IMG/VR virus record: IMGVR_UViG_3300044712_000810
Coordinates: 250,838-314,837 of that record
Length of the DNA stretch: 64,000 bases
Strand: one strand, 5' to 3'
The translations under genes were made by a program, and so were the position numbers. Of this stretch, positions 2,763 to 54,602 are shown in pieces. The notes beneath the pieces are model-generated. The model saw only the letters and a program-made list of their open reading frames with translations, had not been told where the DNA came from and did not search any database. Positions within the stretch are counted from its first letter, which is position 1; the number at the start of each line of letters is the position of its first letter.

Positions 2763-4724
2763 ATGATCTCCTCAGTTAACCTTAGCGCAATACCATTTCA
2801 ATCAAACACTGACAGTACCCGACTTCAAATGGCAGCCAAGCAATTGGCACAGAGTTTATCACATAGGAATTGTGAAGTTCCTTATGTAATTGGTAAAGAT
2901 TATAATTGTCTTTCTGATAACAGTCCAATCGGTTTATTATTTGCCGAAGATTCGGGCACTGTTTATTATAATAGAGATGATGTACTCATTTATCATTATG
3001 AAACTTTAAATAAATTGGAAGTAAAGTCGATTCCACCAATTAAAAAGACTCATGGAATTTATGCTAGTAGCTTAAGATCTTCACTTCCAGTAAATATGAA
3101 GTTTAATAAAGGTGATATTCTTTATGAATATGACTGTTTTAAAAATGGTATTCCAAGTATTGGCTATAATGCATTCTCTGCAATGATGCCTTGTTTTGGA
3201 TTTAACCATGAAGATAGTATTTTAATTTCTGAAAGTTTTGCAGAAAAAACTAGAGCAAATTTTGTTGATAAAGTTTATGTTCCGATTTATGAATATACTT
3301 TATTGCAACAACTATATGATCCTTCAACAAACCATTTTGGATTCTTTCCAAACATTGGTGAAGAAATCAAAAATAGTTTAATTTGTTGCACACTAACACC
3401 TAAAATTACTGATAACATGAAATATGGCGCACATGCCAATATGAAAAACAAAATGATGCTATTACTTAAATCTATGAACTTATCTGATTTACTTAGTATT
3501 CAAAACTCTTTACCAAACATGAACGTTGAAAAGATCAAAAGTAAACTTGAACATGGTAAAGTATCTGGTATTAAAATTCATAAACTTATGGATAACGTAA
3601 AGTTATTGGATAAGCGTTTACAAACTGTTCTTGATGGTTTATATAAACTATACACAAACGTTTTTATTGATGCATATCATGAACTTGAAACAAAGTTCAT
3701 GCAAGATGTAGCAAAAGATGTATTACGTCGTCACTATGTTTACAAAGATAAAGATAGTGTTCGAGGTAAATTAGATCTAAAAAACGTTGCATATGTATTG
3801 GAAATTGAAGTTACCGATGAGTGTCAATCACATGTTGGTGATAAATTTGCAAATCGTTATGCAAACAAAGGTGTAGTATCATTGGTATTTCCAGATGATA
3901 TTGCACCAATTGCAGTACAATCAAATAAACCGGTTGATATTATATTTAACCCCTTTGGTGTATTCTCACGTATGAACCTTGGACAATTAGTTGAAGGTAT
4001 CGTATCTAAAAACGTAATGCATTGTGATAGTTATATCAAAGAAGGAAATAAAAAAGATCTTAAAGCTTCTATCTGGTGGTTAAATGAATATATCATTAAA
4101 AACCTTAATGATATGGAATATTACAATCGTGTAAATTCAGAAGTGATTGCCAGATTGGATGAACCAAAGTTTAAAGAACAATTCATTGAAGACGTTAAAC
4201 AACATAACCTTTTCATTGAAGCGCCAACATTTGGTGAAATTAATGTTCGTAATATTCTTAAAAATGGTGTAAATCCAAACGAACAAGTATATATTAAGAA
4301 AGAATTTCTTCAATATATGAAAGACAAACTGAAATGTAATATTAATATGCCAATTCAGGATGTCGTATTGCCAAATATTTATTGTGCGCCGATGTATATT
4401 GAAAAATTATATAAATTGGCTAACAAACTTATTACGGCCCGAGATCTTGGTCCAATTAAAAGTATTACTGGACAACCAAAACGTGGACGCGCAAATGAAG
4501 GTGGATCACGTCTTGGACAGATGGAACTTGAAGGTATTCTTGCACATGGATGTGAAAGAACACTTAAAGAGTTCTTGACAGTTAAATCAGATCAACTTGA
4601 TGCAAAACGTGACTTGATTATGCAGTTAATGAAAACTGGTAATTATCGTATGCGCGATGAATATGGTGCATCTGGTAGAACAAAGAAAGTTGTTGACACA
4701 CTTTTACACTTCCTGCGAGAATAA
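2763..4724 (+). CDS. rpoB: multi-subunit RNA polymerase beta subunit, C-terminal half
   Basis: GDKFANRYANKGVV, PVDIIFNPFGVFSRMNLGQ, TGQPKRGRANEGGSRLGQME match conserved beta regions. Confidence 0.93.
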   Translation: MISSVNLSAIPFQSNTDSTRLQMAAKQLAQSLSHRNCEVPYVIGKDYNCLSDNSPIGLLFAEDSGTVYYNRDDVLIYHYETLNKLEVKSIPPIKKTHGIYASSLRSSLPVNMKFNKGDILYEYDCFKNGIPSIGYNAFSAMMPCFGFNHEDSILISESFAEKTRANFVDKVYVPIYEYTLLQQLYDPSTNHFGFFPNIGEEIKNSLICCTLTPKITDNMKYGAHANMKNKMMLLLKSMNLSDLLSIQNSLPNMNVEKIKSKLEHGKVSGIKIHKLMDNVKLLDKRLQTVLDGLYKLYTNVFIDAYHELETKFMQDVAKDVLRRHYVYKDKDSVRGKLDLKNVAYVLEIEVTDECQSHVGDKFANRYANKGVVSLVFPDDIAPIAVQSNKPVDIIFNPFGVFSRMNLGQLVEGIVSKNVMHCDSYIKEGNKKDLKASIWWLNEYIIKNLNDMEYYNRVNSEVIARLDEPKFKEQFIEDVKQHNLFIEAPTFGEINVRNILKNGVNPNEQVYIKKEFLQYMKDKLKCNINMPIQDVVLPNIYCAPMYIEKLYKLANKLITARDLGPIKSITGQPKRGRANEGGSRLGQMELEGILAHGCERTLKEFLTVKSDQLDAKRDLIMQLMKTGNYRMRDEYGASGRTKKVVDTLLHFLRE

Positions 4725-14192: not shown

Positions 14193-14206
14193 TTTCATAT
14201 AGAAAT
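14193..14206 (+). promoter_or_regulatory. recurrent promoter-like motif
   Basis: TTTCATATAGAAAT. Confidence 0.7.
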
Positions 14207-14280
14207 GGTATAGACAGAGTAGGCACACTCTCTCCCCCTGGTAAAGTGGGGGAGTTTTTCGGCTGCTCCCCCACTTTTTT
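14207..14280 (+). ncRNA. candidate small RNA (~70 nt)
   Basis: Lies between a promoter motif and terminator AAAGTGGGGGAG..CTCCCCCACTTT-TTT; no ORF; hairpin AGAGT/ACTCT. Confidence 0.5.
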
Positions 14281-14302
14281 AATTGGTTTTTATTTTTTCT
14301 AG

Positions 14303-25356: not shown

Positions 25357-25396
25357 ATATTCTCAAATTTGATATGGAAATATTCAGTTGTACAAA
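25356..25396 (+). repeat. 41-bp direct repeat copy 1, containing the promoter motif
   Basis: 37/41 identical to 25938-25978. Confidence 0.8.
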
Positions 25397-25399
25397 TTT

Positions 25400-25478
25400 C
25401 CGAGGCCTAGCTTAATATTAAAGCGCCTATCCGTTACACGATAGGAGAATACTGGTGAAATTCCGGTGCCGAGGGCCA
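25400..25478 (+). tRNA. atypical tRNA-like gene 1 (Val-UAC-like, 10-nt anticodon loop)
   Basis: TAGCTT..AAGC D arm without GG; CCTAT/ATAGG; T loop TGAAATT; CCA. Confidence 0.55.
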
Positions 25479-25483
25479 TTTAT

Positions 25484-25560
25484 CGGGGACATAGCTTAAA
25501 AGAAAGCGCCTGTTCTTACAGACAGGAGAATCGTTGGTGTGATTCCGACATCCTCGACCA
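25484..25560 (+). tRNA. atypical tRNA-like gene 2 (Val-UAC-like, 8-nt anticodon loop)
   Basis: CCTGT-TCTTACAG-ACAGG; T loop TGTGATT; ACCA. Confidence 0.6.
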
Positions 25561-25565
25561 TTTAT

Positions 25566-25640
25566 CTCGGTGTAGCTTAATTTAGAGCGCCTGTCCTTAC
25601 AGACAGGAGATGATAGGCGAACCTCCTATCCCCGGGACCA
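25566..25640 (+). tRNA. atypical tRNA-like gene 3 (Val-UAC-like, 8-nt anticodon loop)
   Basis: CCTGT-CCTTACAG-ACAGG; T loop CGAACCT; ACCA. Confidence 0.6.
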
Positions 25641-27745: not shown

Positions 27746-27756
27746 GGAGAAACGAC

Positions 27757-27951
27757 GTGGCAAAAGGTGATTCCAAAGGCGGTTCCAAGGGAGCTTCGAA
27801 AGCTGGAAGCAAAGCAGCTTCCGGAAACGTCAAGCGCGGCAAGGGTATTCCCAAGCGCACGTCAATCGGCCTGTCTCCTCAGAGCCGTCCGAAGAACAAA
27901 AACAAACGTCGTCTGGCTGGCAAACGCGTCTATCGCGGACAAGGCAGATAA
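27757..27951 (+). CDS. small highly basic protein
   Basis: AAGGAG SD, GTG start; KRTSIG...KRR..YRGQGR. Confidence 0.7.
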   Translation: MAKGDSKGGSKGASKAGSKAASGNVKRGKGIPKRTSIGLSPQSRPKNKNKRRLAGKRVYRGQGR

Positions 27952-27961
27952 ATAAAATTGC

Positions 27962-39909: not shown

Positions 39910-39984
39910 CTCTGTATAGCTCAGTGGCAGAGCTGGGAACTCTAAATTCCCCGGTCGCGAGTTCGAGTCTCGCTACAGAGGCCA
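39910..39984 (+). tRNA. amber suppressor tRNA (CTA anticodon)
   Basis: Perfect cloverleaf: CTCTGTA/TACAGAG, GGGAA-CT CTA AA-TTCCC, TTCGAGT T loop, G73-CCA. Confidence 0.92.
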
Positions 39985-50251: not shown

Positions 50252-50497
50252 ATGGGTAATGCGGCAAAAAATATTGGATTTGTCTTAAATCAAGCTAAAA
50301 CAAAAATCATGGGTTTTATGACATGGACATCAAAAGAACCACACAAATTAATGATGTTTAAAGAATCGTGTTGTTTTTATGTAGATTCAGAGACGAATTT
50401 ACCAATGGTTAAGTGGGCTGATAGCTCGGGCAAGATATGGAAAGGACAATTACAGTTAAATAGTATTGTTCCTGATGGTCAAGTTGAGAGTGAATAA
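50252..50497 (+). CDS. hypothetical protein
   Basis: AGGAG SD. Confidence 0.65.
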   Translation: MGNAAKNIGFVLNQAKTKIMGFMTWTSKEPHKLMMFKESCCFYVDSETNLPMVKWADSSGKIWKGQLQLNSIVPDGQVESE

Positions 50498-50514
50498 TAT
50501 TTAATATTCATAAG

Positions 50515-50528
50515 TTTGATATAGAAAT
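50515..50528 (+). promoter_or_regulatory. recurrent promoter-like motif
   Basis: TTTGATATAGAAAT. Confidence 0.7.
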
Positions 50529-50535
50529 ATTAATG

Positions 50536-50716
50536 AAAGCTCCGGAGAGGCATCGCCCCACCCCACGCTGGCCCGGACATGATCTGACGCCATAGCGTAG
50601 CTTCGCCACAGCGTAACCCGATAGGCAGATTTGCACACGGGCATCGGCCATCGACGCTAACTGGCGATCTGGCACATCGCCTCTCCACTCGCTTGAGGGG
50701 ACCTTCGGGTCCCCTT
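50536..50716 (+). ncRNA. candidate small RNA A
   Basis: GC-rich; GGAGAGGC/GCCTCTCC closing stem; terminator GAGGGGACC-TTCG-GGTCCCCTT. Confidence 0.6.
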
Positions 50717-50739
50717 TCTACTTTTTTTGTTTTCTGTAT

Positions 50740-50753
50740 TTTGATATAGAAAT
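50740..50753 (+). promoter_or_regulatory. recurrent promoter-like motif
   Basis: TTTGATATAGAAAT. Confidence 0.7.
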
Positions 50754-50761
50754 AGTAAAGT

Positions 50762-50885
50762 ACGCATAATGGAAACGCCGGGATGCCTCCTTGGCTCTTG
50801 TGGGATTGGCTCACAAGGGTAATAAGGTCCGGTTGATCCATGCGTGGTTGGCGGGGTAGAGTCTGTATAGATTCCCCCGCTAACC
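50762..50885 (+). ncRNA. candidate small RNA B
   Basis: ACGCAT/ATGCGT closed hairpin domain, then terminator GGTTGGCGGGG/CCCCGCTAACC. Confidence 0.6.
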
Positions 50886-50912
50886 GATATTTATTTTTTT
50901 AATATTTACTTG

Positions 50913-50926
50913 TTTCATATAGAAAT
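50913..50926 (+). promoter_or_regulatory. recurrent promoter-like motif
   Basis: TTTCATATAGAAAT. Confidence 0.7.
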
Positions 50927-50937
50927 AGTTAATTAAA

Positions 50938-51120
50938 GAGTTCTGTTCAAAAAAAACAAAACTCATCTAAGTAGCACCACCCGAAGAAATTCGGTACTTA
51001 GATGAAACCACCACCTAAGCAGAACTCAGAGAGGCCTCCCTTCAACCTACAGCACCACCCTACTGCTAAAGAGGGAGCCTCAAGACAACAACCAGGACAG
51101 TTTCACGACTGCCCTGTTTT
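50938..51120 (+). ncRNA. candidate small RNA C with three CACCACC motifs
   Basis: GAGTTCTG/CAGAACTC, CATCTAAGTA/TACTTAGATG, CTCCCT/AGGGAG stems. Confidence 0.6.
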
Positions 51121-51144
51121 CATTTCTTTTTTTGGAGGATTTTT

Positions 51145-51333
51145 ATGGGATGGATTAGAGATATAGATTGTCCATTTTGTGAACATGAGTTCGAATGGGA
51201 AGTCTGGGAAAATGGTAAATGTCCAAAATGTGGTGAAGAATTTTATTGGTCAGAAGATTGCACTGAAGATTATTCAGATTGTTGGGATAGTTTATGGTGG
51301 AATAAATGGGATGAAGAAAGGAGAAATAAATGA
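51145..51333 (+). CDS. small acidic Trp-rich zinc-ribbon protein
   Basis: CPFC...CPKC; GGAGG SD; overlaps the beta' start. Confidence 0.7.
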   Translation: MGWIRDIDCPFCEHEFEWEVWENGKCPKCGEEFYWSEDCTEDYSDCWDSLWWNKWDEERRNK

Positions 51334-52631
51334 AACTTAATTTATTAGATATAAATGAGTTTGTGACTAAAAACAATGTTAGACAAGTAAGTACAGTTCG
51401 TGTATATGAACGTCCAAATAAACTTGATGAAACCGGTCTATTTAGTGAAGTAATCTTTGGTCGTATTGGTTCAAATGACCGTCGTAAACGCTTTGGTTAT
51501 ATTAATTTAAAATGTCGAGTATTACATCCAGAAACTTATAGTTTACTAGTTCGTTTAGATCCTTCAATCAGTAAGTTTATAATGCAAAAAGCAACTTATG
51601 AACTTAGTGAAAATGGTGAACTCATAGAATCTGAAAATGGTGTTAATGGTGTATATAATCTTGTTGAATTCTTACCAAAAATGAAATTTGATAAGTTCAA
51701 GAATCAAGAAATTGCAAAATTTGTAAAAAAGAATCTTGATAAAATTATCATTGATAAAATTCTAGTTTTACCTGCAGGTATTCGTGACTTAAAATTATCA
51801 AAGATATCTGGTAAATCTCAAGTACAATTTGCTGAAATTAATAAATTATATGAAGCTATTATTAAACAATCAAACTCAATTCCTGATGATTTGTCTAGTT
51901 TACCACAAGAATTCTCATCAAGTTTTGTTCAAACAATTCAAAGAAAAGTACTTGAAATAAATGAATGGATCAAATCAAAAATGAAAGGTAAGTCTGGTCT
52001 TATTCGTGGTGGACTACTTAAGAAAGTAATCGACTACTCCGCCCGTCTTATCATTGTTTCTGATCCGACTCTTAAATTAGGTCAACTTGGTTTACCTTGG
52101 CAAGTAGTACTTAAACTTTATGAACCATTTACTTTAAATTACTTTTTACATAAAGATCAAACTTCATTAGCGCTTATTCAAGATAATCTTGGCGCAAACA
52201 TGACACCAGATATTAATGATCTTAAAAGATTTATTCAAAAAATAAATGAAGATCCAACAAGCATTAGTGAACTATTAAAAGACCATCTTATTGCTGCTGC
52301 ACATGACATTAGTAAAGGTAAAACCATTTTATATAAACGTGACCCGGTTGAAGCTCGTGACAACTATATGGGCGCTGATGTTCGTGTTGATCGTGAATCT
52401 AGTGTTGCACGTATGAATCCACTTGATCTTCCAAGATGCGGTGGTGACTTTGACGGTGACCAGATTGCTATATTCCCACTATTTACAAAAGAAGCAAATG
52501 CAGAAGCAAGTGCGAAGTTACATCCATCAAATTCAAAAGCAATGTGGACAAGTTCTGTAAGTTTAAGCAGACAACCATATTTCTTACAACTTGATGCAGC
52601 AACAACTCTTTATGCAATTACTAAGGAGTAA
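51330..52631 (+). CDS. rpoC: RNA polymerase beta' subunit, N-terminal part with catalytic motif
   Basis: GLFSEVIFG, RFGYINL, KGKSGLIR...K..DYSAR, GGDFDGDQ. Confidence 0.93.
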   Translation: MKLNLLDINEFVTKNNVRQVSTVRVYERPNKLDETGLFSEVIFGRIGSNDRRKRFGYINLKCRVLHPETYSLLVRLDPSISKFIMQKATYELSENGELIESENGVNGVYNLVEFLPKMKFDKFKNQEIAKFVKKNLDKIIIDKILVLPAGIRDLKLSKISGKSQVQFAEINKLYEAIIKQSNSIPDDLSSLPQEFSSSFVQTIQRKVLEINEWIKSKMKGKSGLIRGGLLKKVIDYSARLIIVSDPTLKLGQLGLPWQVVLKLYEPFTLNYFLHKDQTSLALIQDNLGANMTPDINDLKRFIQKINEDPTSISELLKDHLIAAAHDISKGKTILYKRDPVEARDNYMGADVRVDRESSVARMNPLDLPRCGGDFDGDQIAIFPLFTKEANAEASAKLHPSNSKAMWTSSVSLSRQPYFLQLDAATTLYAITKE

Positions 52632-52634
52632 AAC

Positions 52635-54578
52635 ATGTCAGAAGATCTATTTAATGAAATAATGGGATTCACAGTTGATCCACATCGTATTCAACAAACA
52701 TCAATGAATCAACCACAACAAGGATATATTGCACCAACAACAATGCAACAACATGATAGACAAGACTTTGGTATTGAATTTTCACATTGCGCAACAATGG
52801 AACCATGGCAACGTAGAATTTCTGACGTTTTAAAACATGGTAAAGATGTATATGTTGTTGCTGCACCAGGAGGTGGTAAAACACTTCCAGTATTTTGTCA
52901 CTGGACAAATAATATTCTTAATTTAAATACAATGATGACTGGCCCAGCAAACGATAAAGCATATACAGAATGTGTAAAAAATATATTTTTGGAACCTAAT
53001 AAAATACCAAAAATCCTATTCTTAGTTCCAACAAGATCACTCGCAATGCAAACAGAACAAGAAGTTCGTGCTGTATTTGGTGATATTATATCACAAACAA
53101 TGAATCGATTTTTAAAAGTAACACAATTTGAAGAATCGATTGATAGTGAAACTTTTGGACCATCCGCACCGGGACATTATACTCCTCATGATGCAGCACA
53201 AAGAGCTTATAATAACAATTTACAAAGACAAATATTTGAAAAACTTGGCAATAGCAATTTAATAATGATGATGACTGAAATTGCCAGACTTGCGGAAGAA
53301 CGTCGAAGTGCAACAAACGATTATGAAAAATCAAGAATTCGAAATATAATCGATTCATATAAACGTCAATTTAAACAAGAATTAATTGAATCTTTAAGAA
53401 ATTATATGAATGGAAATCTGTTACGAGTAAAAACTGGCGACTATAATATTGATGGAAATAATGCATTAGTTCATATTTCTATTTATGAATCCGCAGTAAA
53501 TATAGTTAATAATATGTCTAACCTAGGATTAATTATTATTGACGAAGCGCACTTAATTCAAAAGTCAGGTGAAATTGGCGACGAATCACGTAATAGACAA
53601 ATAGCAGAAGCATTATATACAGTTCTACATAAATTAAAAGGTAGTAAAACAAATATAGTTTTACTATCTGGAACTGAACATCCAGAAAGTGCACAAGAAA
53701 TCATTAAATATTTAAATCATTGTTTTGGAAGAAACTTTGAAAAATCTGATGCACTTATTCAAAGTTCCAGTGGAAACAGATCACAATTAAGTATTGTTCC
53801 AGATGATAGTTTGATGAATGATTCAAAACTTGTCGATATCGTCGTCAACGCTGTAAGGAAAAAAGATTGGGGTGAATTAATTGTATTATTTTCTGCAAGA
53901 AAAATTGTAAAAATTGCAGAAGAAGCAATTAAAAAATTAGGAACAAGAGATTTAAAAACTGTAAATACTAATGTTCAGTATGGTCATCAATTTACTAGTA
54001 TTTATGGTAATATAGAAAAACAAGCTCCATCAATGTCAATATCAAGAAATGATGCACATGCTATTTCACAACCAAAACCAGAATTATCTGATGCCTCAAA
54101 TATTAAAGATCCACTATTACGCGCATGTGTATCCGCTGGTTTTGGTTTTTATTTCCGTAATATGCCAGATGGTGGTGGCGAAGTAAGTGACAACGATAAG
54201 TTTATTGTAAGTAAATTATTTAAAGATAAAAAAATACACGCAATGCTCGCAACAGACGGTGTTGGTATTGGAGTTAATATTGACGTTAAACGTATTTATA
54301 TTCCAAGAATTGAAAAATTCGAAGCTATAATTGGTGATAATAAAGAAATTCCATTACGTGACTTAGCACAAATACTTAACAGAGCTGGTCGTGGTAAAAT
54401 TCCATTCGCATCAATATTTACACCATCAGGAAATGTTGAAATGGTAAGATCTGCATTATCAGCTACTGCAGAACAATTCAATGTTGTCCCCGCATATAGT
54501 AAAATTGGTTTTGGAATGATATGTCATAAGTTCGAAGCCTTCTATAGTATGTGGAAAGAAATGTCTGTCAAATTTTAA
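52635..54578 (+). CDS. SF2 DEAH-box helicase (Ski2-like)
   Basis: APGGGKT, VPTRSLA, IIDEAH, LSGT, GVNI, QILNRAGR. Confidence 0.9.
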   Translation: MSEDLFNEIMGFTVDPHRIQQTSMNQPQQGYIAPTTMQQHDRQDFGIEFSHCATMEPWQRRISDVLKHGKDVYVVAAPGGGKTLPVFCHWTNNILNLNTMMTGPANDKAYTECVKNIFLEPNKIPKILFLVPTRSLAMQTEQEVRAVFGDIISQTMNRFLKVTQFEESIDSETFGPSAPGHYTPHDAAQRAYNNNLQRQIFEKLGNSNLIMMMTEIARLAEERRSATNDYEKSRIRNIIDSYKRQFKQELIESLRNYMNGNLLRVKTGDYNIDGNNALVHISIYESAVNIVNNMSNLGLIIIDEAHLIQKSGEIGDESRNRQIAEALYTVLHKLKGSKTNIVLLSGTEHPESAQEIIKYLNHCFGRNFEKSDALIQSSSGNRSQLSIVPDDSLMNDSKLVDIVVNAVRKKDWGELIVLFSARKIVKIAEEAIKKLGTRDLKTVNTNVQYGHQFTSIYGNIEKQAPSMSISRNDAHAISQPKPELSDASNIKDPLLRACVSAGFGFYFRNMPDGGGEVSDNDKFIVSKLFKDKKIHAMLATDGVGIGVNIDVKRIYIPRIEKFEAIIGDNKEIPLRDLAQILNRAGRGKIPFASIFTPSGNVEMVRSALSATAEQFNVVPAYSKIGFGMICHKFEAFYSMWKEMSVKF

Positions 54579-54588
54579 TTTTGTCTTA

Positions 54589-54602
54589 ATTCATATAGAA
54601 AT
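54589..54602 (+). promoter_or_regulatory. recurrent promoter-like motif
   Basis: ATTCATATAGAAAT. Confidence 0.65.

What the first reader, a model, noticed from the sequence alone, without database searches (positions are those of the whole stretch)
50515..51120. Cassette of three tandem promoter-sRNA-terminator units with no coding capacity
Seen: three promoter motifs (50515, 50740, 50913), each followed by a GC-rich, extensively base-paired 125-185-nt sequence and a terminal hairpin with a T tract, in a genome that is otherwise AT-rich and densely coding. The three RNAs are unrelated in sequence. Inference: independently expressed phage small RNAs (host takeover, anti-defence decoys or protein sponges).
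Basis: partly seen in the sequence, partly recalled or inferred. Interest (0 to 1): 0.72.

Follow-up and report, generated by a model that had tools for sequence, protein, structure and literature searches.

The report
Three tandem small-RNA genes in jumbo phage
A 650-base gap just upstream of an uncultivated jumbo phage's RNA polymerase gene holds three separate small RNA genes with no known relatives, each with its own phage promoter and terminator; two of them expose loops that match the start regions of the phage's own early messages, so they may regulate translation.

Summary
Window 50498-51144 is a 647-nt gap with no credible gene. It contains three perfect copies of the phage's own promoter motif (TTTSATATAGAAATA with an upstream AT box). 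This motif has about 75-90 copies genome-wide and also drives tRNA genes.

Each copy is followed by a structured RNA of about 195, 140 or 200 nt (43-60% GC; genome 33%; fold z-scores -3.6 to -6.6). Each RNA ends in a GC hairpin plus T tract. The three RNAs are unrelated to each other.

None has a relative in Rfam, in the rest of the 315-kb genome, in about 85 related phage loci, or in viral, metagenome and genome pattern scans. A near-identical RNA1 from a wastewater sample carries one compensatory base-pair change.

Function is not shown. The best leads are:
- **RNA2** exposes GAUGCCUCCUUGG. At least 9 nt of it match the ribosome-binding site of 13/48 promoter-proximal genes, against 7/345 other genes.
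- **RNA3** has three CACCACC loops. One is 12/12 complementary to the 5' end of another transcript that starts at a copy of the same promoter motif.
- **RNA3** may also serve as leader of the downstream Zn-ribbon/RNAP beta'/helicase operon.

I rate this a new member of a known kind (phage small RNAs), of moderate interest.

The parts
50498..50529 (+). Promoter 1: AT box (TTTAATATT) plus core TTTGATATAGAAATA (50515-50529)
   Evidence: 0-mismatch motif hit; member of the genome-wide family of about 75-90 sites
50535..50728 (+). RNA1, about 194 nt, 60% GC. Multi-branched core 50537-50694 closed by GGAGAGGC/GCCUCUCC; unpaired CCACCCC at 50558-50564; terminator hairpin 50694-50716 (UUCG loop) plus U tract. 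The 5' end is inferred, not mapped.
   Evidence: Fold dG -76.7, z -3.6. Terminator scan hit. Wastewater variant about 97% identical with a compensatory 50565 A>G / 50598 U>C.
50720..50754 (+). Promoter 2: T/AT-rich box overlapping RNA1's U tract, plus core TTTGATATAGAAATA (50740-50754)
   Evidence: 0-mismatch motif hit
50758..50900 (+). RNA2, about 143 nt, 49% GC. An 89-nt rod-like hairpin (50761-50846) followed by a long interrupted terminator hairpin (50846-50885) and a T run.
   Evidence: Fold dG -64.9, z -6.3. The + strand folds much better than the - strand, -64.9 vs -44.8.
50782..50794 (+). RNA2 anti-RBS segment GAUGCCUCCUUGG. It lies in internal loops flanking a weak 4-bp helix.
   Evidence: Perfect 10-12-nt complements at the RBS of at least 13 phage genes. 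At least 9 nt match at 13/48 promoter-proximal starts vs 7/345 others, Fisher p 1e-8. Duplex with the RBS at genome 160990 is -25.5 kcal/mol.
50893..50927 (+). Promoter 3: AT box (TTTTTAATATT) overlapping RNA2's T run, plus core TTTCATATAGAAATA (50913-50927)
   Evidence: 0-mismatch motif hit
50932..51134 (+). RNA3, about 203 nt, 43% GC, C>G skewed. Hairpin domain 1 (50938-51027) has a 15x12-nt internal bubble; domain 2 is 51031-51081; an A/C-rich linker follows; then terminator hairpin 51093-51116 and a U tract.
   Evidence: Fold dG -58.2, z -6.6. Terminator found by my own scan. No antiterminator alternative fold.
50974..50980 (+). RNA3 unpaired loop GCACCAC (first CACCACC motif)
   Evidence: Unpaired probability >0.6
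51006..51017 (+). RNA3 unpaired internal loop AACCACCACCUA (second CACCACC motif)
   Evidence: Unpaired. ACCACCACCUAA is 12/12 complementary to genome 153075-153086, which lies 5-16 nt after the promoter copy at 153055. Shuffle test p 0.037. Duplex -25.9 kcal/mol.
51055..51063 (+). RNA3 unpaired loop CCACCCUAC (third motif, GCACCACCC)
   Evidence: Unpaired
51145..51333 (+). 62-aa zinc-ribbon ORF. Its SD (GGAGG) lies inside the end of RNA3's T tract, and no promoter of this class lies in between. It is the first gene of the Zn-ribbon / RNAP beta' (51330-52631) / helicase (52635-54578) run.
   Evidence: ORF list. Zn_ribbon_6 weak hit and phrog_9188. The next promoter motif is at 54589.

Best explanation
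The gap holds three separate RNA genes.

How they are made (shown from sequence): each RNA starts a few bases after a perfect copy of the phage's own roughly 35-nt promoter. The same signal elsewhere drives tRNA genes and short-leader protein genes. From the genes it fronts I infer it is an early or middle class, but its timing was not tested. Each RNA ends at a constitutive intrinsic terminator. For RNA1 and RNA2 the terminator's T run doubles as the AT box of the next promoter. The products are about 195, 140 and 200 nt, non-coding, GC-enriched and tightly folded from the first to the last base.

How they act (inferred): most likely in trans as riboregulators that use exposed C-rich loops.
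- RNA2 carries an anti-ribosome-binding-site segment (GAUGCCUCCUUGG). It matches the standardised RBS (CAAGGAGGCA) of the phage's promoter-proximal genes, so it would cover their Shine-Dalgarno sequence and damp their translation.
- RNA3 carries three CACCACC loops. One pairs 12/12 with the extreme 5' end of the transcript at genome 153075, upstream of a 44-aa membrane-protein gene.
- Read-through of RNA3's terminator probably also supplies the Zn-ribbon/RNAP beta'/helicase operon.
- RNA1 is a compact multi-helix RNA with no convincing target, which fits protein binding better than base pairing.

Confidence differs by layer: that these are discrete non-coding RNA genes, about 0.85; that base pairing is how RNA2 and RNA3 work, about 0.3-0.35. 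The overall figure of 0.45 is a compromise between the two layers.
For: - Promoter family and its use at tRNA genes.
- The motif core is conserved in relatives with 40-73% identical RNAP beta'.
- Folds and z-scores.
- Terminators without a competing fold.
- No ORF and no protein-family hit.
- Near-identical RNA1 in another biome with one compensatory pair.
- RNA2 anti-RBS enrichment, 13/48 vs 7/345, p 1e-8.
- RNA3 12/12 match sitting in its largest C-rich unpaired loop.
- Promoter-driven unknown RNAs in relatives keep their helices through compensatory changes, 2 and about 10 pairs.
Against: - There is no transcript evidence at all. The one RNA-library fragment spans promoters and is probably DNA, and no RNA run was listed for RNA2-RNA3.
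- The complementarity statistics are post hoc and modest against shuffles: p 0.02 for RNA2 and 0.037 for RNA3.
- The RNA2 result largely reflects a CCUCCUU core that any anti-SD-like sequence would share.
- Four bases of the RNA2 seed are paired in the predicted fold.
- RNA1 has no target; its longest match to a promoter-proximal 5' region is no better than shuffles.
- For RNA1 and RNA3 the opposite strand folds even better, so fold energy alone does not fix the strand.
- No homologs exist for a covariation test.
- The host and any RNA chaperone are unknown.
Confidence: 0.45

Rival explanations
1. The array is a cis-acting leader and insulator. The three terminators would stop transcription coming from the late structural genes upstream. 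RNA3, and possibly all three units, would be the 5' leader through which the Zn-ribbon/RNAP beta'/helicase operon is transcribed, with partial or regulated read-through. On this view the short RNAs are by-products.
For: - No promoter of this class lies between RNA3's terminator (T tract ends about 51133, overlapping the SD) and the start codon of the 62-aa ORF at 51145. The next one is at 54589.
- Three relatives have promoter + unrelated structured RNA + terminator immediately upstream of beta': L021 2990-3240, L140 640-950, L139 217-385.
- The same promoter-leader-terminator-gene layout recurs in this genome at 37220, 147737, 175300 and 240868.
Against: - RNA1 and RNA2 are followed by another promoter, not by a gene.
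- No alternative antiterminator pairing exists for the RNA2 and RNA3 terminators, so the 5' arm stays free. Only a weak one exists for RNA1.
- An insulator needs hairpins, not 90-160 nt of extra GC-rich folded RNA.
- Most relatives have beta' directly behind a small ORF with no leader.
Confidence: 0.25
2. The RNAs are protein-binding RNAs: decoys or sponges for a host factor or defence protein, or scaffolds for a phage RNP such as the phage's own Ro60 ortholog or its RNA polymerase. They would act through shape and repeated CCACC loops rather than through base pairing.
For: - GC enrichment and multi-helix compaction are typical of structural RNAs in AT-rich genomes.
- Four unpaired CCACC-type loops are shared by RNA1 and RNA3.
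- The RNAs are singletons in a variable locus: the same spot holds an IS200/IS605 element in L013 and different RNAs in L021 and L140. That fits accessory, fast-evolving functions.
- The phage encodes Ro60/Rsr and RtcB.
Against: - No partner was identified.
- The Y-RNA slot is already filled by a YrlA-like RNA about 650 nt downstream of rsr. RNA1-3 lie about 260 kb away and lack the YrlA hit and the tRNA-like domain.
- The complex prediction was not run by the tool, so it gives no evidence either way.
Confidence: 0.2
3. The gap holds non-functional filler: decaying remnants of inserted foreign GC-rich DNA or a mobile element, caught between the phage's standard terminator-promoter punctuation marks.
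For: The locus is an insertion hot spot in relatives (IS200/IS605 in L013). The RNAs have no homologs anywhere.
Against: - All three promoter cores are perfect, whereas most of the genome's copies carry 1-2 mismatches.
- Folds begin right after the presumed start and run up to the terminator, with z down to -6.6.
- About 97% identity with a compensatory change in a wastewater relative.
- No similarity to the L013 element.
Confidence: 0.07
4. One or more units encode a very small protein, for example the 17-codon AUG frame at 50769 in RNA2 or the 54-codon frame at 51002 in RNA3.
For: Open frames exist. A relative's similar unit (L014 10989-11125) does look like an SD-led 25-aa hydrophobic peptide gene.
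Against: None of the frames here has an SD, whereas the phage's genes use strong GGAGG sites. The frames cross terminators and promoters. There are no family hits.
Confidence: 0.03

Closest known systems
T4 stable RNAs 'species 1 and 2' (RNA C and RNA D), encoded with the phage tRNA cluster (from my own knowledge, not checked in a paper here)
   Same: Small, stable, structured, non-coding RNAs of a large tRNA-rich lytic phage. They are expressed from the same kind of transcription signals as the phage tRNAs, and their function is unknown.
   Different: No sequence or Rfam relationship. The T4 RNAs are processed out of the tRNA precursor, whereas here each RNA has its own promoter and terminator and lies next to the RNAP gene, not in the tRNA array.
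C-rich-loop base-pairing sRNAs of Gram-positive bacteria (RsaE/RoxS type), and anti-SD sRNAs in general (from my own knowledge)
   Same: Terminator-ended sRNAs of about 100-200 nt that expose C-rich single-stranded motifs and pair with G-rich Shine-Dalgarno regions. RNA2's CCUCCUU core and the CCACC loops of RNA1 and RNA3 fit that design.
   Different: No homology (Rfam found nothing). The RNAs are phage-encoded. The candidate targets are the phage's own promoter-proximal mRNAs. The RNA3 motif (CACCACC) pairs with GGUGGUG, not with a canonical SD.
T4 RegB endoribonuclease, which inactivates early mRNAs by cutting GGAG in their SD (from my own knowledge)
   Same: Works like it, if the RNA2 reading is right: a phage factor that selectively silences the phage's own early messages through their ribosome-binding sites.
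   Different: RegB is a protein nuclease. Here the agent would be an antisense RNA, and nothing is shown experimentally.
Y RNAs / YrlA bound by Ro60 (Chen et al. 2014, PMC4201824)
   Same: The phage encodes a Ro60 ortholog. RNA1 has paired 5' and 3' ends closing a multi-branched body, and RNA3 domain 1 is a long stem with a large internal loop.
   Different: Not within 4 kb of rsr. There is no YrlA model hit, no GNCGAAN0-1G motif near the 5' end and no tRNA-like T/D arms. A separate YrlA-like RNA sits next to rsr.
ncRNAs reported from transcriptomes of jumbo phages phiKZ and PA5oct (PMC8244752, PMC7318152; seen as titles and abstracts only)
   Same: Non-coding RNAs in jumbo phages, some of which carry their own multisubunit RNAP.
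   Different: Those were found by RNA-seq and are unrelated in sequence. I have not seen a tandem three-gene cassette with perfect promoter copies described for them.

Membership tests
Any Rfam 15 family | Covariance-model score at or above the gathering threshold, or at least E<0.01 in a local search | tested here: not met
   The window at gathering threshold gives only tRNAs. For 50400-51250 at E<=10 the best hit is snoR09 at E 0.22 on the wrong strand. The rest of the genome gives only tRNAs.
tRNA / tmRNA | Cloverleaf or tRNA-like domain recognised by ARAGORN or the Rfam tRNA clan | tested here: not met
   27 tRNAs in the window, none in 50498-51144
Y RNA (YrlA type) | Encoded within about 4 kb of the Ro60 gene on the same strand (PMC4201824) | tested here: not met
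   The rsr ortholog is at genome 37360-38982. The cassette is at genome 301335-301981, about 260 kb away.
Y RNA (YrlA type) | YrlA covariance-model match, GNCGAAN0-1G motif near the 5' end, and tRNA-like T and D arms | tested here: not met
   No YrlA hit at E<=10 in the cassette, while L223 2628-2747 next to rsr scores 36 bits, E 2e-5. By reading the sequence, the motif is absent from the 5' ends of RNA1-3.
Y RNA (YrlA type) | Binding to Ro60 | not testable with these tools
Riboswitch / transcription attenuator leader | Terminator whose 5' arm can alternatively pair with an upstream segment (antiterminator), placed directly upstream of the regulated gene | tested here: not met
   With the 3' arm withheld, the 5' arm of the RNA2 and RNA3 terminators stays unpaired or only trivially paired; RNA1 shows only a weak alternative. 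Only RNA3 is followed by a gene.
Trans-acting base-pairing sRNA (anti-SD type) | Own promoter and intrinsic terminator, with no ORF | tested here: met
Trans-acting base-pairing sRNA (anti-SD type) | Accessible seed complementary to the RBS or 5' UTR of target mRNAs beyond chance | tested here: inconclusive
   RNA2: 13/48 vs 7/345 starts with a match of at least 9 nt, p 1e-8, but shuffle p is 0.02 and the seed is partly paired. RNA3: 12/12 match in an unpaired loop, shuffle p 0.037. RNA1: none.
Trans-acting base-pairing sRNA (anti-SD type) | Target regulation lost on seed mutation and restored by a compensatory mutation | not testable with these tools
   Needs reporter assays
6S RNA | Rod of about 180 nt with a central open-promoter-like bubble; Rfam 6S model match; RNAP binding | tested here: not met
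   No 6S hit at E<=10. RNA3 domain 1 has a 15x12 bubble but is only 90 nt. RNAP binding cannot be tested here.

The most novel reading that the evidence does not exclude
RNA2 is an RNA-based shut-off switch for the phage's promoter-proximal genes. It would be a phage sRNA whose anti-RBS is tuned to the standardised leader (promoter, about 10 nt, CAAGGAGGCA, 3-5 nt, AUG) shared by a quarter of those genes, so that its accumulation silences them together. That would make it an antisense counterpart of the T4 RegB nuclease. RNA3 would add gene-specific control through its CACCACC loops. Together the cassette next to the RNAP gene would time the phage's developmental programme.
Probability: 0.2. 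Interest if true: 0.7.

Novelty: new member of a known kind. Interest (0 to 1): 0.5.

Why it matters
Large phages with their own RNA polymerases are mostly known from protein annotation, and their RNA genes are nearly unmapped. This cassette is a clean, sequence-defined example. It has three RNAs with no known relatives, bounded by a promoter signal that can be read across a whole uncultivated phage clade.

The same signal gives a simple way to list non-coding RNAs in these genomes. Several more turned up here and in relatives, some with compensatory changes.

If the RNA2 reading is right, it would show a phage regulating its own early translation with an anti-RBS RNA. That is testable with reporter fusions even without the unknown host.

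If instead the RNAs are decoys, the variable locus would be a place to look for RNA-based counter-defence.

Tried and rejected
**Homology searches that found nothing**
- Rfam at gathering and at E<=10.
- blastn 'distant' against 50,697 phage records.
- blastn and nhmmer against own genome and 2.1 Mb of related loci.
- Single-sequence covariance models of the three cores against 866 kb, covering the own genome plus about 85 relatives' loci.
- Exact 22-30-mers from each RNA in viral, metagenome and genome collections.

**Pattern scans that gave only chance or irrelevant hits**
- A triple-CACCACC pattern in viral contigs returned 16 hits. All are Gly-rich coding repeats read on the opposite strand, so they were rejected.
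- The full promoter pattern in IMG/VR gave only single chance hits, so no relative with this promoter is served there.

**Synteny**
- RNAP beta' relatives (40-73% identity) do not carry the cassette. The closest one, at 73%, has a divergent promoter there.

**Expression**
- The single read-laying run showed only one fragment of about 298 nt, 97% identical, in a wastewater 'RNA-Seq' run. It also covers promoters and so is uninformative about transcripts.
- No RNA run was listed for RNA2-RNA3.

**Readings considered and dropped**
- Coding: Pfam and PHROGs on all frames and alternative stop-codon readings.
- Y RNA: rejected on location, motif and model.
- Ro60-RNA1 complex prediction: the tool did not fold it, so it is no evidence either way.
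- Attenuator: no antiterminator fold.
- Minus-strand RNAs: that strand folds better for RNA1 and RNA3, but it has no promoter motif and no proper terminator.
- IS605 omega-RNA remnant: no similarity to the L013 element.

Full report
**Context.** The window is the last 64 kb of a 314,837-bp IMG/VR virus record with direct terminal repeats. The record is 33% GC and has 32 ARAGORN tRNA genes. The gene just downstream of the finding (51330-52631) is the N-terminal part of a multisubunit RNAP beta' subunit. It is under 30% identical to the split RNAPs of AR9-, PBS1- and phiKZ-type jumbo phages. It is 40-53% identical to many metagenomic proteins, with one at 73%. The phage therefore belongs to an uncultivated jumbo-phage clade, and its host is unknown. 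The source sample is a rhizosphere metagenome, and a near-identical relative occurs in a wastewater sample.

**The observation.** Between the stop of an 81-aa ORF (50497) and the start of a 62-aa zinc-ribbon ORF (51145) lie 647 nt without a credible gene. TTTSATATAGAAATA occurs with no mismatch at 50515, 50740 and 50913. This is not a chance AT-rich word:
- The window has 21 matches at <=2 mismatches against 1.9 expected.
- The genome has 90, of which 71 are on the + strand, the strand most genes use.
- About 75 of them carry a TTTTAATATT-like box roughly 10 nt upstream.
- Most are followed within 10-25 nt by GGAGG and a start codon.
- Four are followed within 10-22 nt by a tRNA gene (Pro, Ala, Cys, Met). 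This places the transcription start within about 10 nt of the motif's end.

The core TATAGAAAT also recurs in relatives' loci, including the 73% relative. I call it the phage's promoter. I infer an early or middle class from the genes it fronts. Its timing and the polymerase that reads it were not tested.

**The three RNAs.**

| RNA | Window coordinates | Length | GC | dG (kcal/mol) | z-score |
|---|---|---|---|---|---|
| RNA1 | 50535-50728 | 194 nt | 60% | -76.7 | -3.6 |
| RNA2 | 50758-50900 | 143 nt | 49% | -64.9 | -6.3 |
| RNA3 | 50932-51134 | 203 nt | 43% | -58.2 | -6.6 |

In each RNA the first helix begins 7-11 nt after the motif, and the last element is a GC-rich hairpin followed by a T run. 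For RNA1 and RNA2 the T run merges into the AT box of the next promoter. This terminator-promoter composite is the genome's usual punctuation. With the 3' arm withheld, the terminators' 5' arms have no competing partner, so termination looks constitutive.

The frames that exist lack an SD, cross the signals and hit no Pfam or PHROG family. Reading TAG or TGA as sense changes nothing. The RNAs do not resemble one another or anything else in the genome.

One caveat on strand: for RNA1 and RNA3 the opposite strand folds even better, because the + strand is C-rich. The strand assignment therefore rests on the promoters and terminators, which exist only on the + strand.

**Conservation.** Rfam 15 recognises nothing here or elsewhere in the genome except tRNAs. 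No search found a relative. The searches were blastn against phage records, exact-word scans of viral, metagenome and genome collections, nhmmer over 2.1 Mb of related loci, and single-sequence covariance models over the whole genome plus about 85 relatives' loci.

The only near relative seen is one fragment of about 298 nt in a wastewater library. It covers 50497-50794 with six substitutions and two single-base deletions. Two of the substitutions are the two sides of one predicted RNA1 pair (A-U to G-C), and one breaks a pair. Because the fragment also spans two promoters, it says nothing about transcripts.

**The locus in relatives.** Most relatives have beta' directly behind a small ORF. 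Other arrangements at the same spot are:
- L013 has an IS200/IS605 element there.
- L021, L140 and L139 have a promoter, an unrelated structured RNA and a terminator immediately upstream of beta'.

Elsewhere in relatives there are further promoter-driven unknown RNAs. L174/L176 keep their helices through 2 compensatory pairs and L145/L142 through about 10. Promoter-bounded structured RNAs are therefore a habit of the clade, they turn over fast, and the spot in front of beta' is variable.

**Leads to mechanism.** The unpaired parts of RNA1 and RNA3 are C-rich and alike: CCACCCC in RNA1, and GCACCAC, AACCACCACCUA and CCACCCUAC in RNA3.

- **RNA3.** A search for perfect complements in the genome found that ACCACCACCUAA pairs 12/12 with genome 153075-153086. 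That site lies 5-16 nt after the promoter copy at 153055, in the leader of a 44-aa membrane-protein gene. The leader itself folds its SD into a hairpin.
- **RNA2.** GAUGCCUCCUUGG (50782-50794) pairs over 10-12 nt with the RBS of at least 13 genes, whose consensus is CAAGGAGGCA. A match of at least 9 nt occurs at 13 of 48 SD-led starts within 90 nt of a promoter, against 7 of 345 other starts (Fisher p 1e-8).
- **Limits.** Against dinucleotide shuffles, the longest match to the 72 promoter-proximal 5' regions is only moderately unusual: p 0.02 for RNA2, 0.037 for RNA3, and none for RNA1. These leads are post hoc. The RNA2 core CCUCCUU is also simply anti-SD-like, and four of its bases sit in a weak helix.

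I take these as the best available pointer, namely riboregulation of the phage's own promoter-proximal messages, and not as proof.

**A cis role for RNA3.** There is no promoter of this class between RNA3's terminator and the 62-aa ORF, and the next one is at 54589. The Zn-ribbon/beta'/helicase run probably depends on read-through, or on a promoter class I cannot recognise. Together with L021, L140 and L139, this makes a leader/insulator reading a serious rival for RNA3. It fits RNA1 and RNA2 poorly, because each is followed by another promoter.

**The Ro60 lead.** The phage encodes a 540-aa Ro60/Rsr ortholog. It matches PDB Ro60 chains at E 4e-16 and the Pfam families vWA_Ro60 and TROVE. The phage also encodes RtcB. 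Y RNAs are the usual partners of Ro60 (PMC4201824). However, a YrlA-like RNA (36 bits, E 2e-5, below the gathering score) lies about 650 nt downstream of rsr on the same strand, as that paper's criteria require. RNA1-3 are about 260 kb away and lack the model hit, the 5' motif and the tRNA-like arms. The protein-RNA complex job was not folded by the tool and counts for nothing.

**Verdict.** The feature is real and is best described as three independent small-RNA genes with no known relatives. It is a new member of a known kind (phage-encoded small RNAs). The anti-RBS reading of RNA2 is interesting but unproven. Overall interest is moderate.

Noticed in passing
L220:769-2391 (genome 37360-38982); L223:2628-2747 (genome 39627-39746); L221/L222 (genome 42592-43626): The phage encodes a Ro60/Rsr ortholog of 540 aa (PDB Ro60 E 4e-16; Pfam vWA_Ro60 and TROVE). 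A YrlA-like Y RNA candidate (36 bits, E 2e-5, below the gathering score) lies about 650 nt downstream on the same strand, and an RtcB RNA ligase about 3.6 kb further on. Together they form an RNA quality-control and repair module beside a second tRNA cluster.
   Followed up: partly
window 25357-25610: Three tandem tRNA-like genes follow the promoter copy at 25368. They show D-arm-like TAGCTTAA..AGCGCC, an anticodon-stem-like CCTGT-TCTTACAG-ACAGG with an apparent 8-nt loop, and ...CCA ends. Neither ARAGORN nor Rfam calls them.
   Followed up: no
genome 163756-164242 (in L124): A GC-rich gap holds tRNA-like halves (T-arm GGTTCGAATCC / GGTTCAAATCC and CCA ends) separated by long AT-rich inserts. 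These may be intron-containing or split tRNA genes. ARAGORN does not call them.
   Followed up: no
window 39910-39984: A tRNA with anticodon CUA (ARAGORN labels it 'Pyl') is an amber-suppressor-type tRNA. It hints at TAG recoding in part of the genome.
   Followed up: no
window 14193-14290: A fourth short promoter-RNA-terminator unit (about 75 nt) has three mutually complementary segments (CUCUCCCCC / GUGGGGGAG / CUCCCCCAC). It looks like a terminator/antiterminator switch and is followed at once by another promoter (14303).
   Followed up: no
genome 37220, 147737, 175300, 235769, 240868 (in L117, L123, L124, L127, L128): Further promoter copies are followed by 80-155 nt of structured non-coding RNA and a terminator, mostly directly upstream of a gene. 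The 37220 unit precedes the Ro60 gene.
   Followed up: partly
genome 39426-39981 (in L223): A motif CTTTTGNAAGGTAA(N10-16)TTCAACG is repeated four times between the tRNA genes next to rsr. Its function is unknown.
   Followed up: no
L145:1325-1790 and L142:30-340; L174:2958-3102 and L176:2108-2252; L013:2764-3110; L021:2990-3240; L140:640-950: Related phages carry their own promoter-driven GC-rich RNAs of 130-450 nt that are unknown to Rfam. The two pairs that can be aligned keep their helices through 2 and about 10 compensatory changes.
   Followed up: partly
L013:7580-9760: In one relative the spot in front of the beta' gene holds an IS200/IS605 element: a TnpA-like frame interrupted by a TAG stop, TnpB, and a GC-rich 3' region that is probably its guide-RNA scaffold.
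   Followed up: no
genome 243265-243401 (in L128) and L018:16165-16225: A shared non-coding motif, CGGTGAAACTCCT...AATACCGAGCCAAGC.TCT...AGAGA.AAGGTGTA, occurs in this phage and in a relative whose RNAP beta' is about 51% identical. It has no Rfam hit at gathering score.
   Followed up: no
L205:2166-2410 and 3418-3662; L218:382-597; L177:2327-2560; L190:4901-5123: Group I introns in or next to the RNAP beta' gene in L205, L218 and L177, and one group II intron about 60 nt downstream of it in L190; this explains some GC-rich islands there.
   Followed up: no
window 27746-27961: A 53% GC island encodes a short, very basic Lys/Gly/Ser/Arg-rich protein between tRNA genes. It is not an RNA gene.
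   Followed up: no
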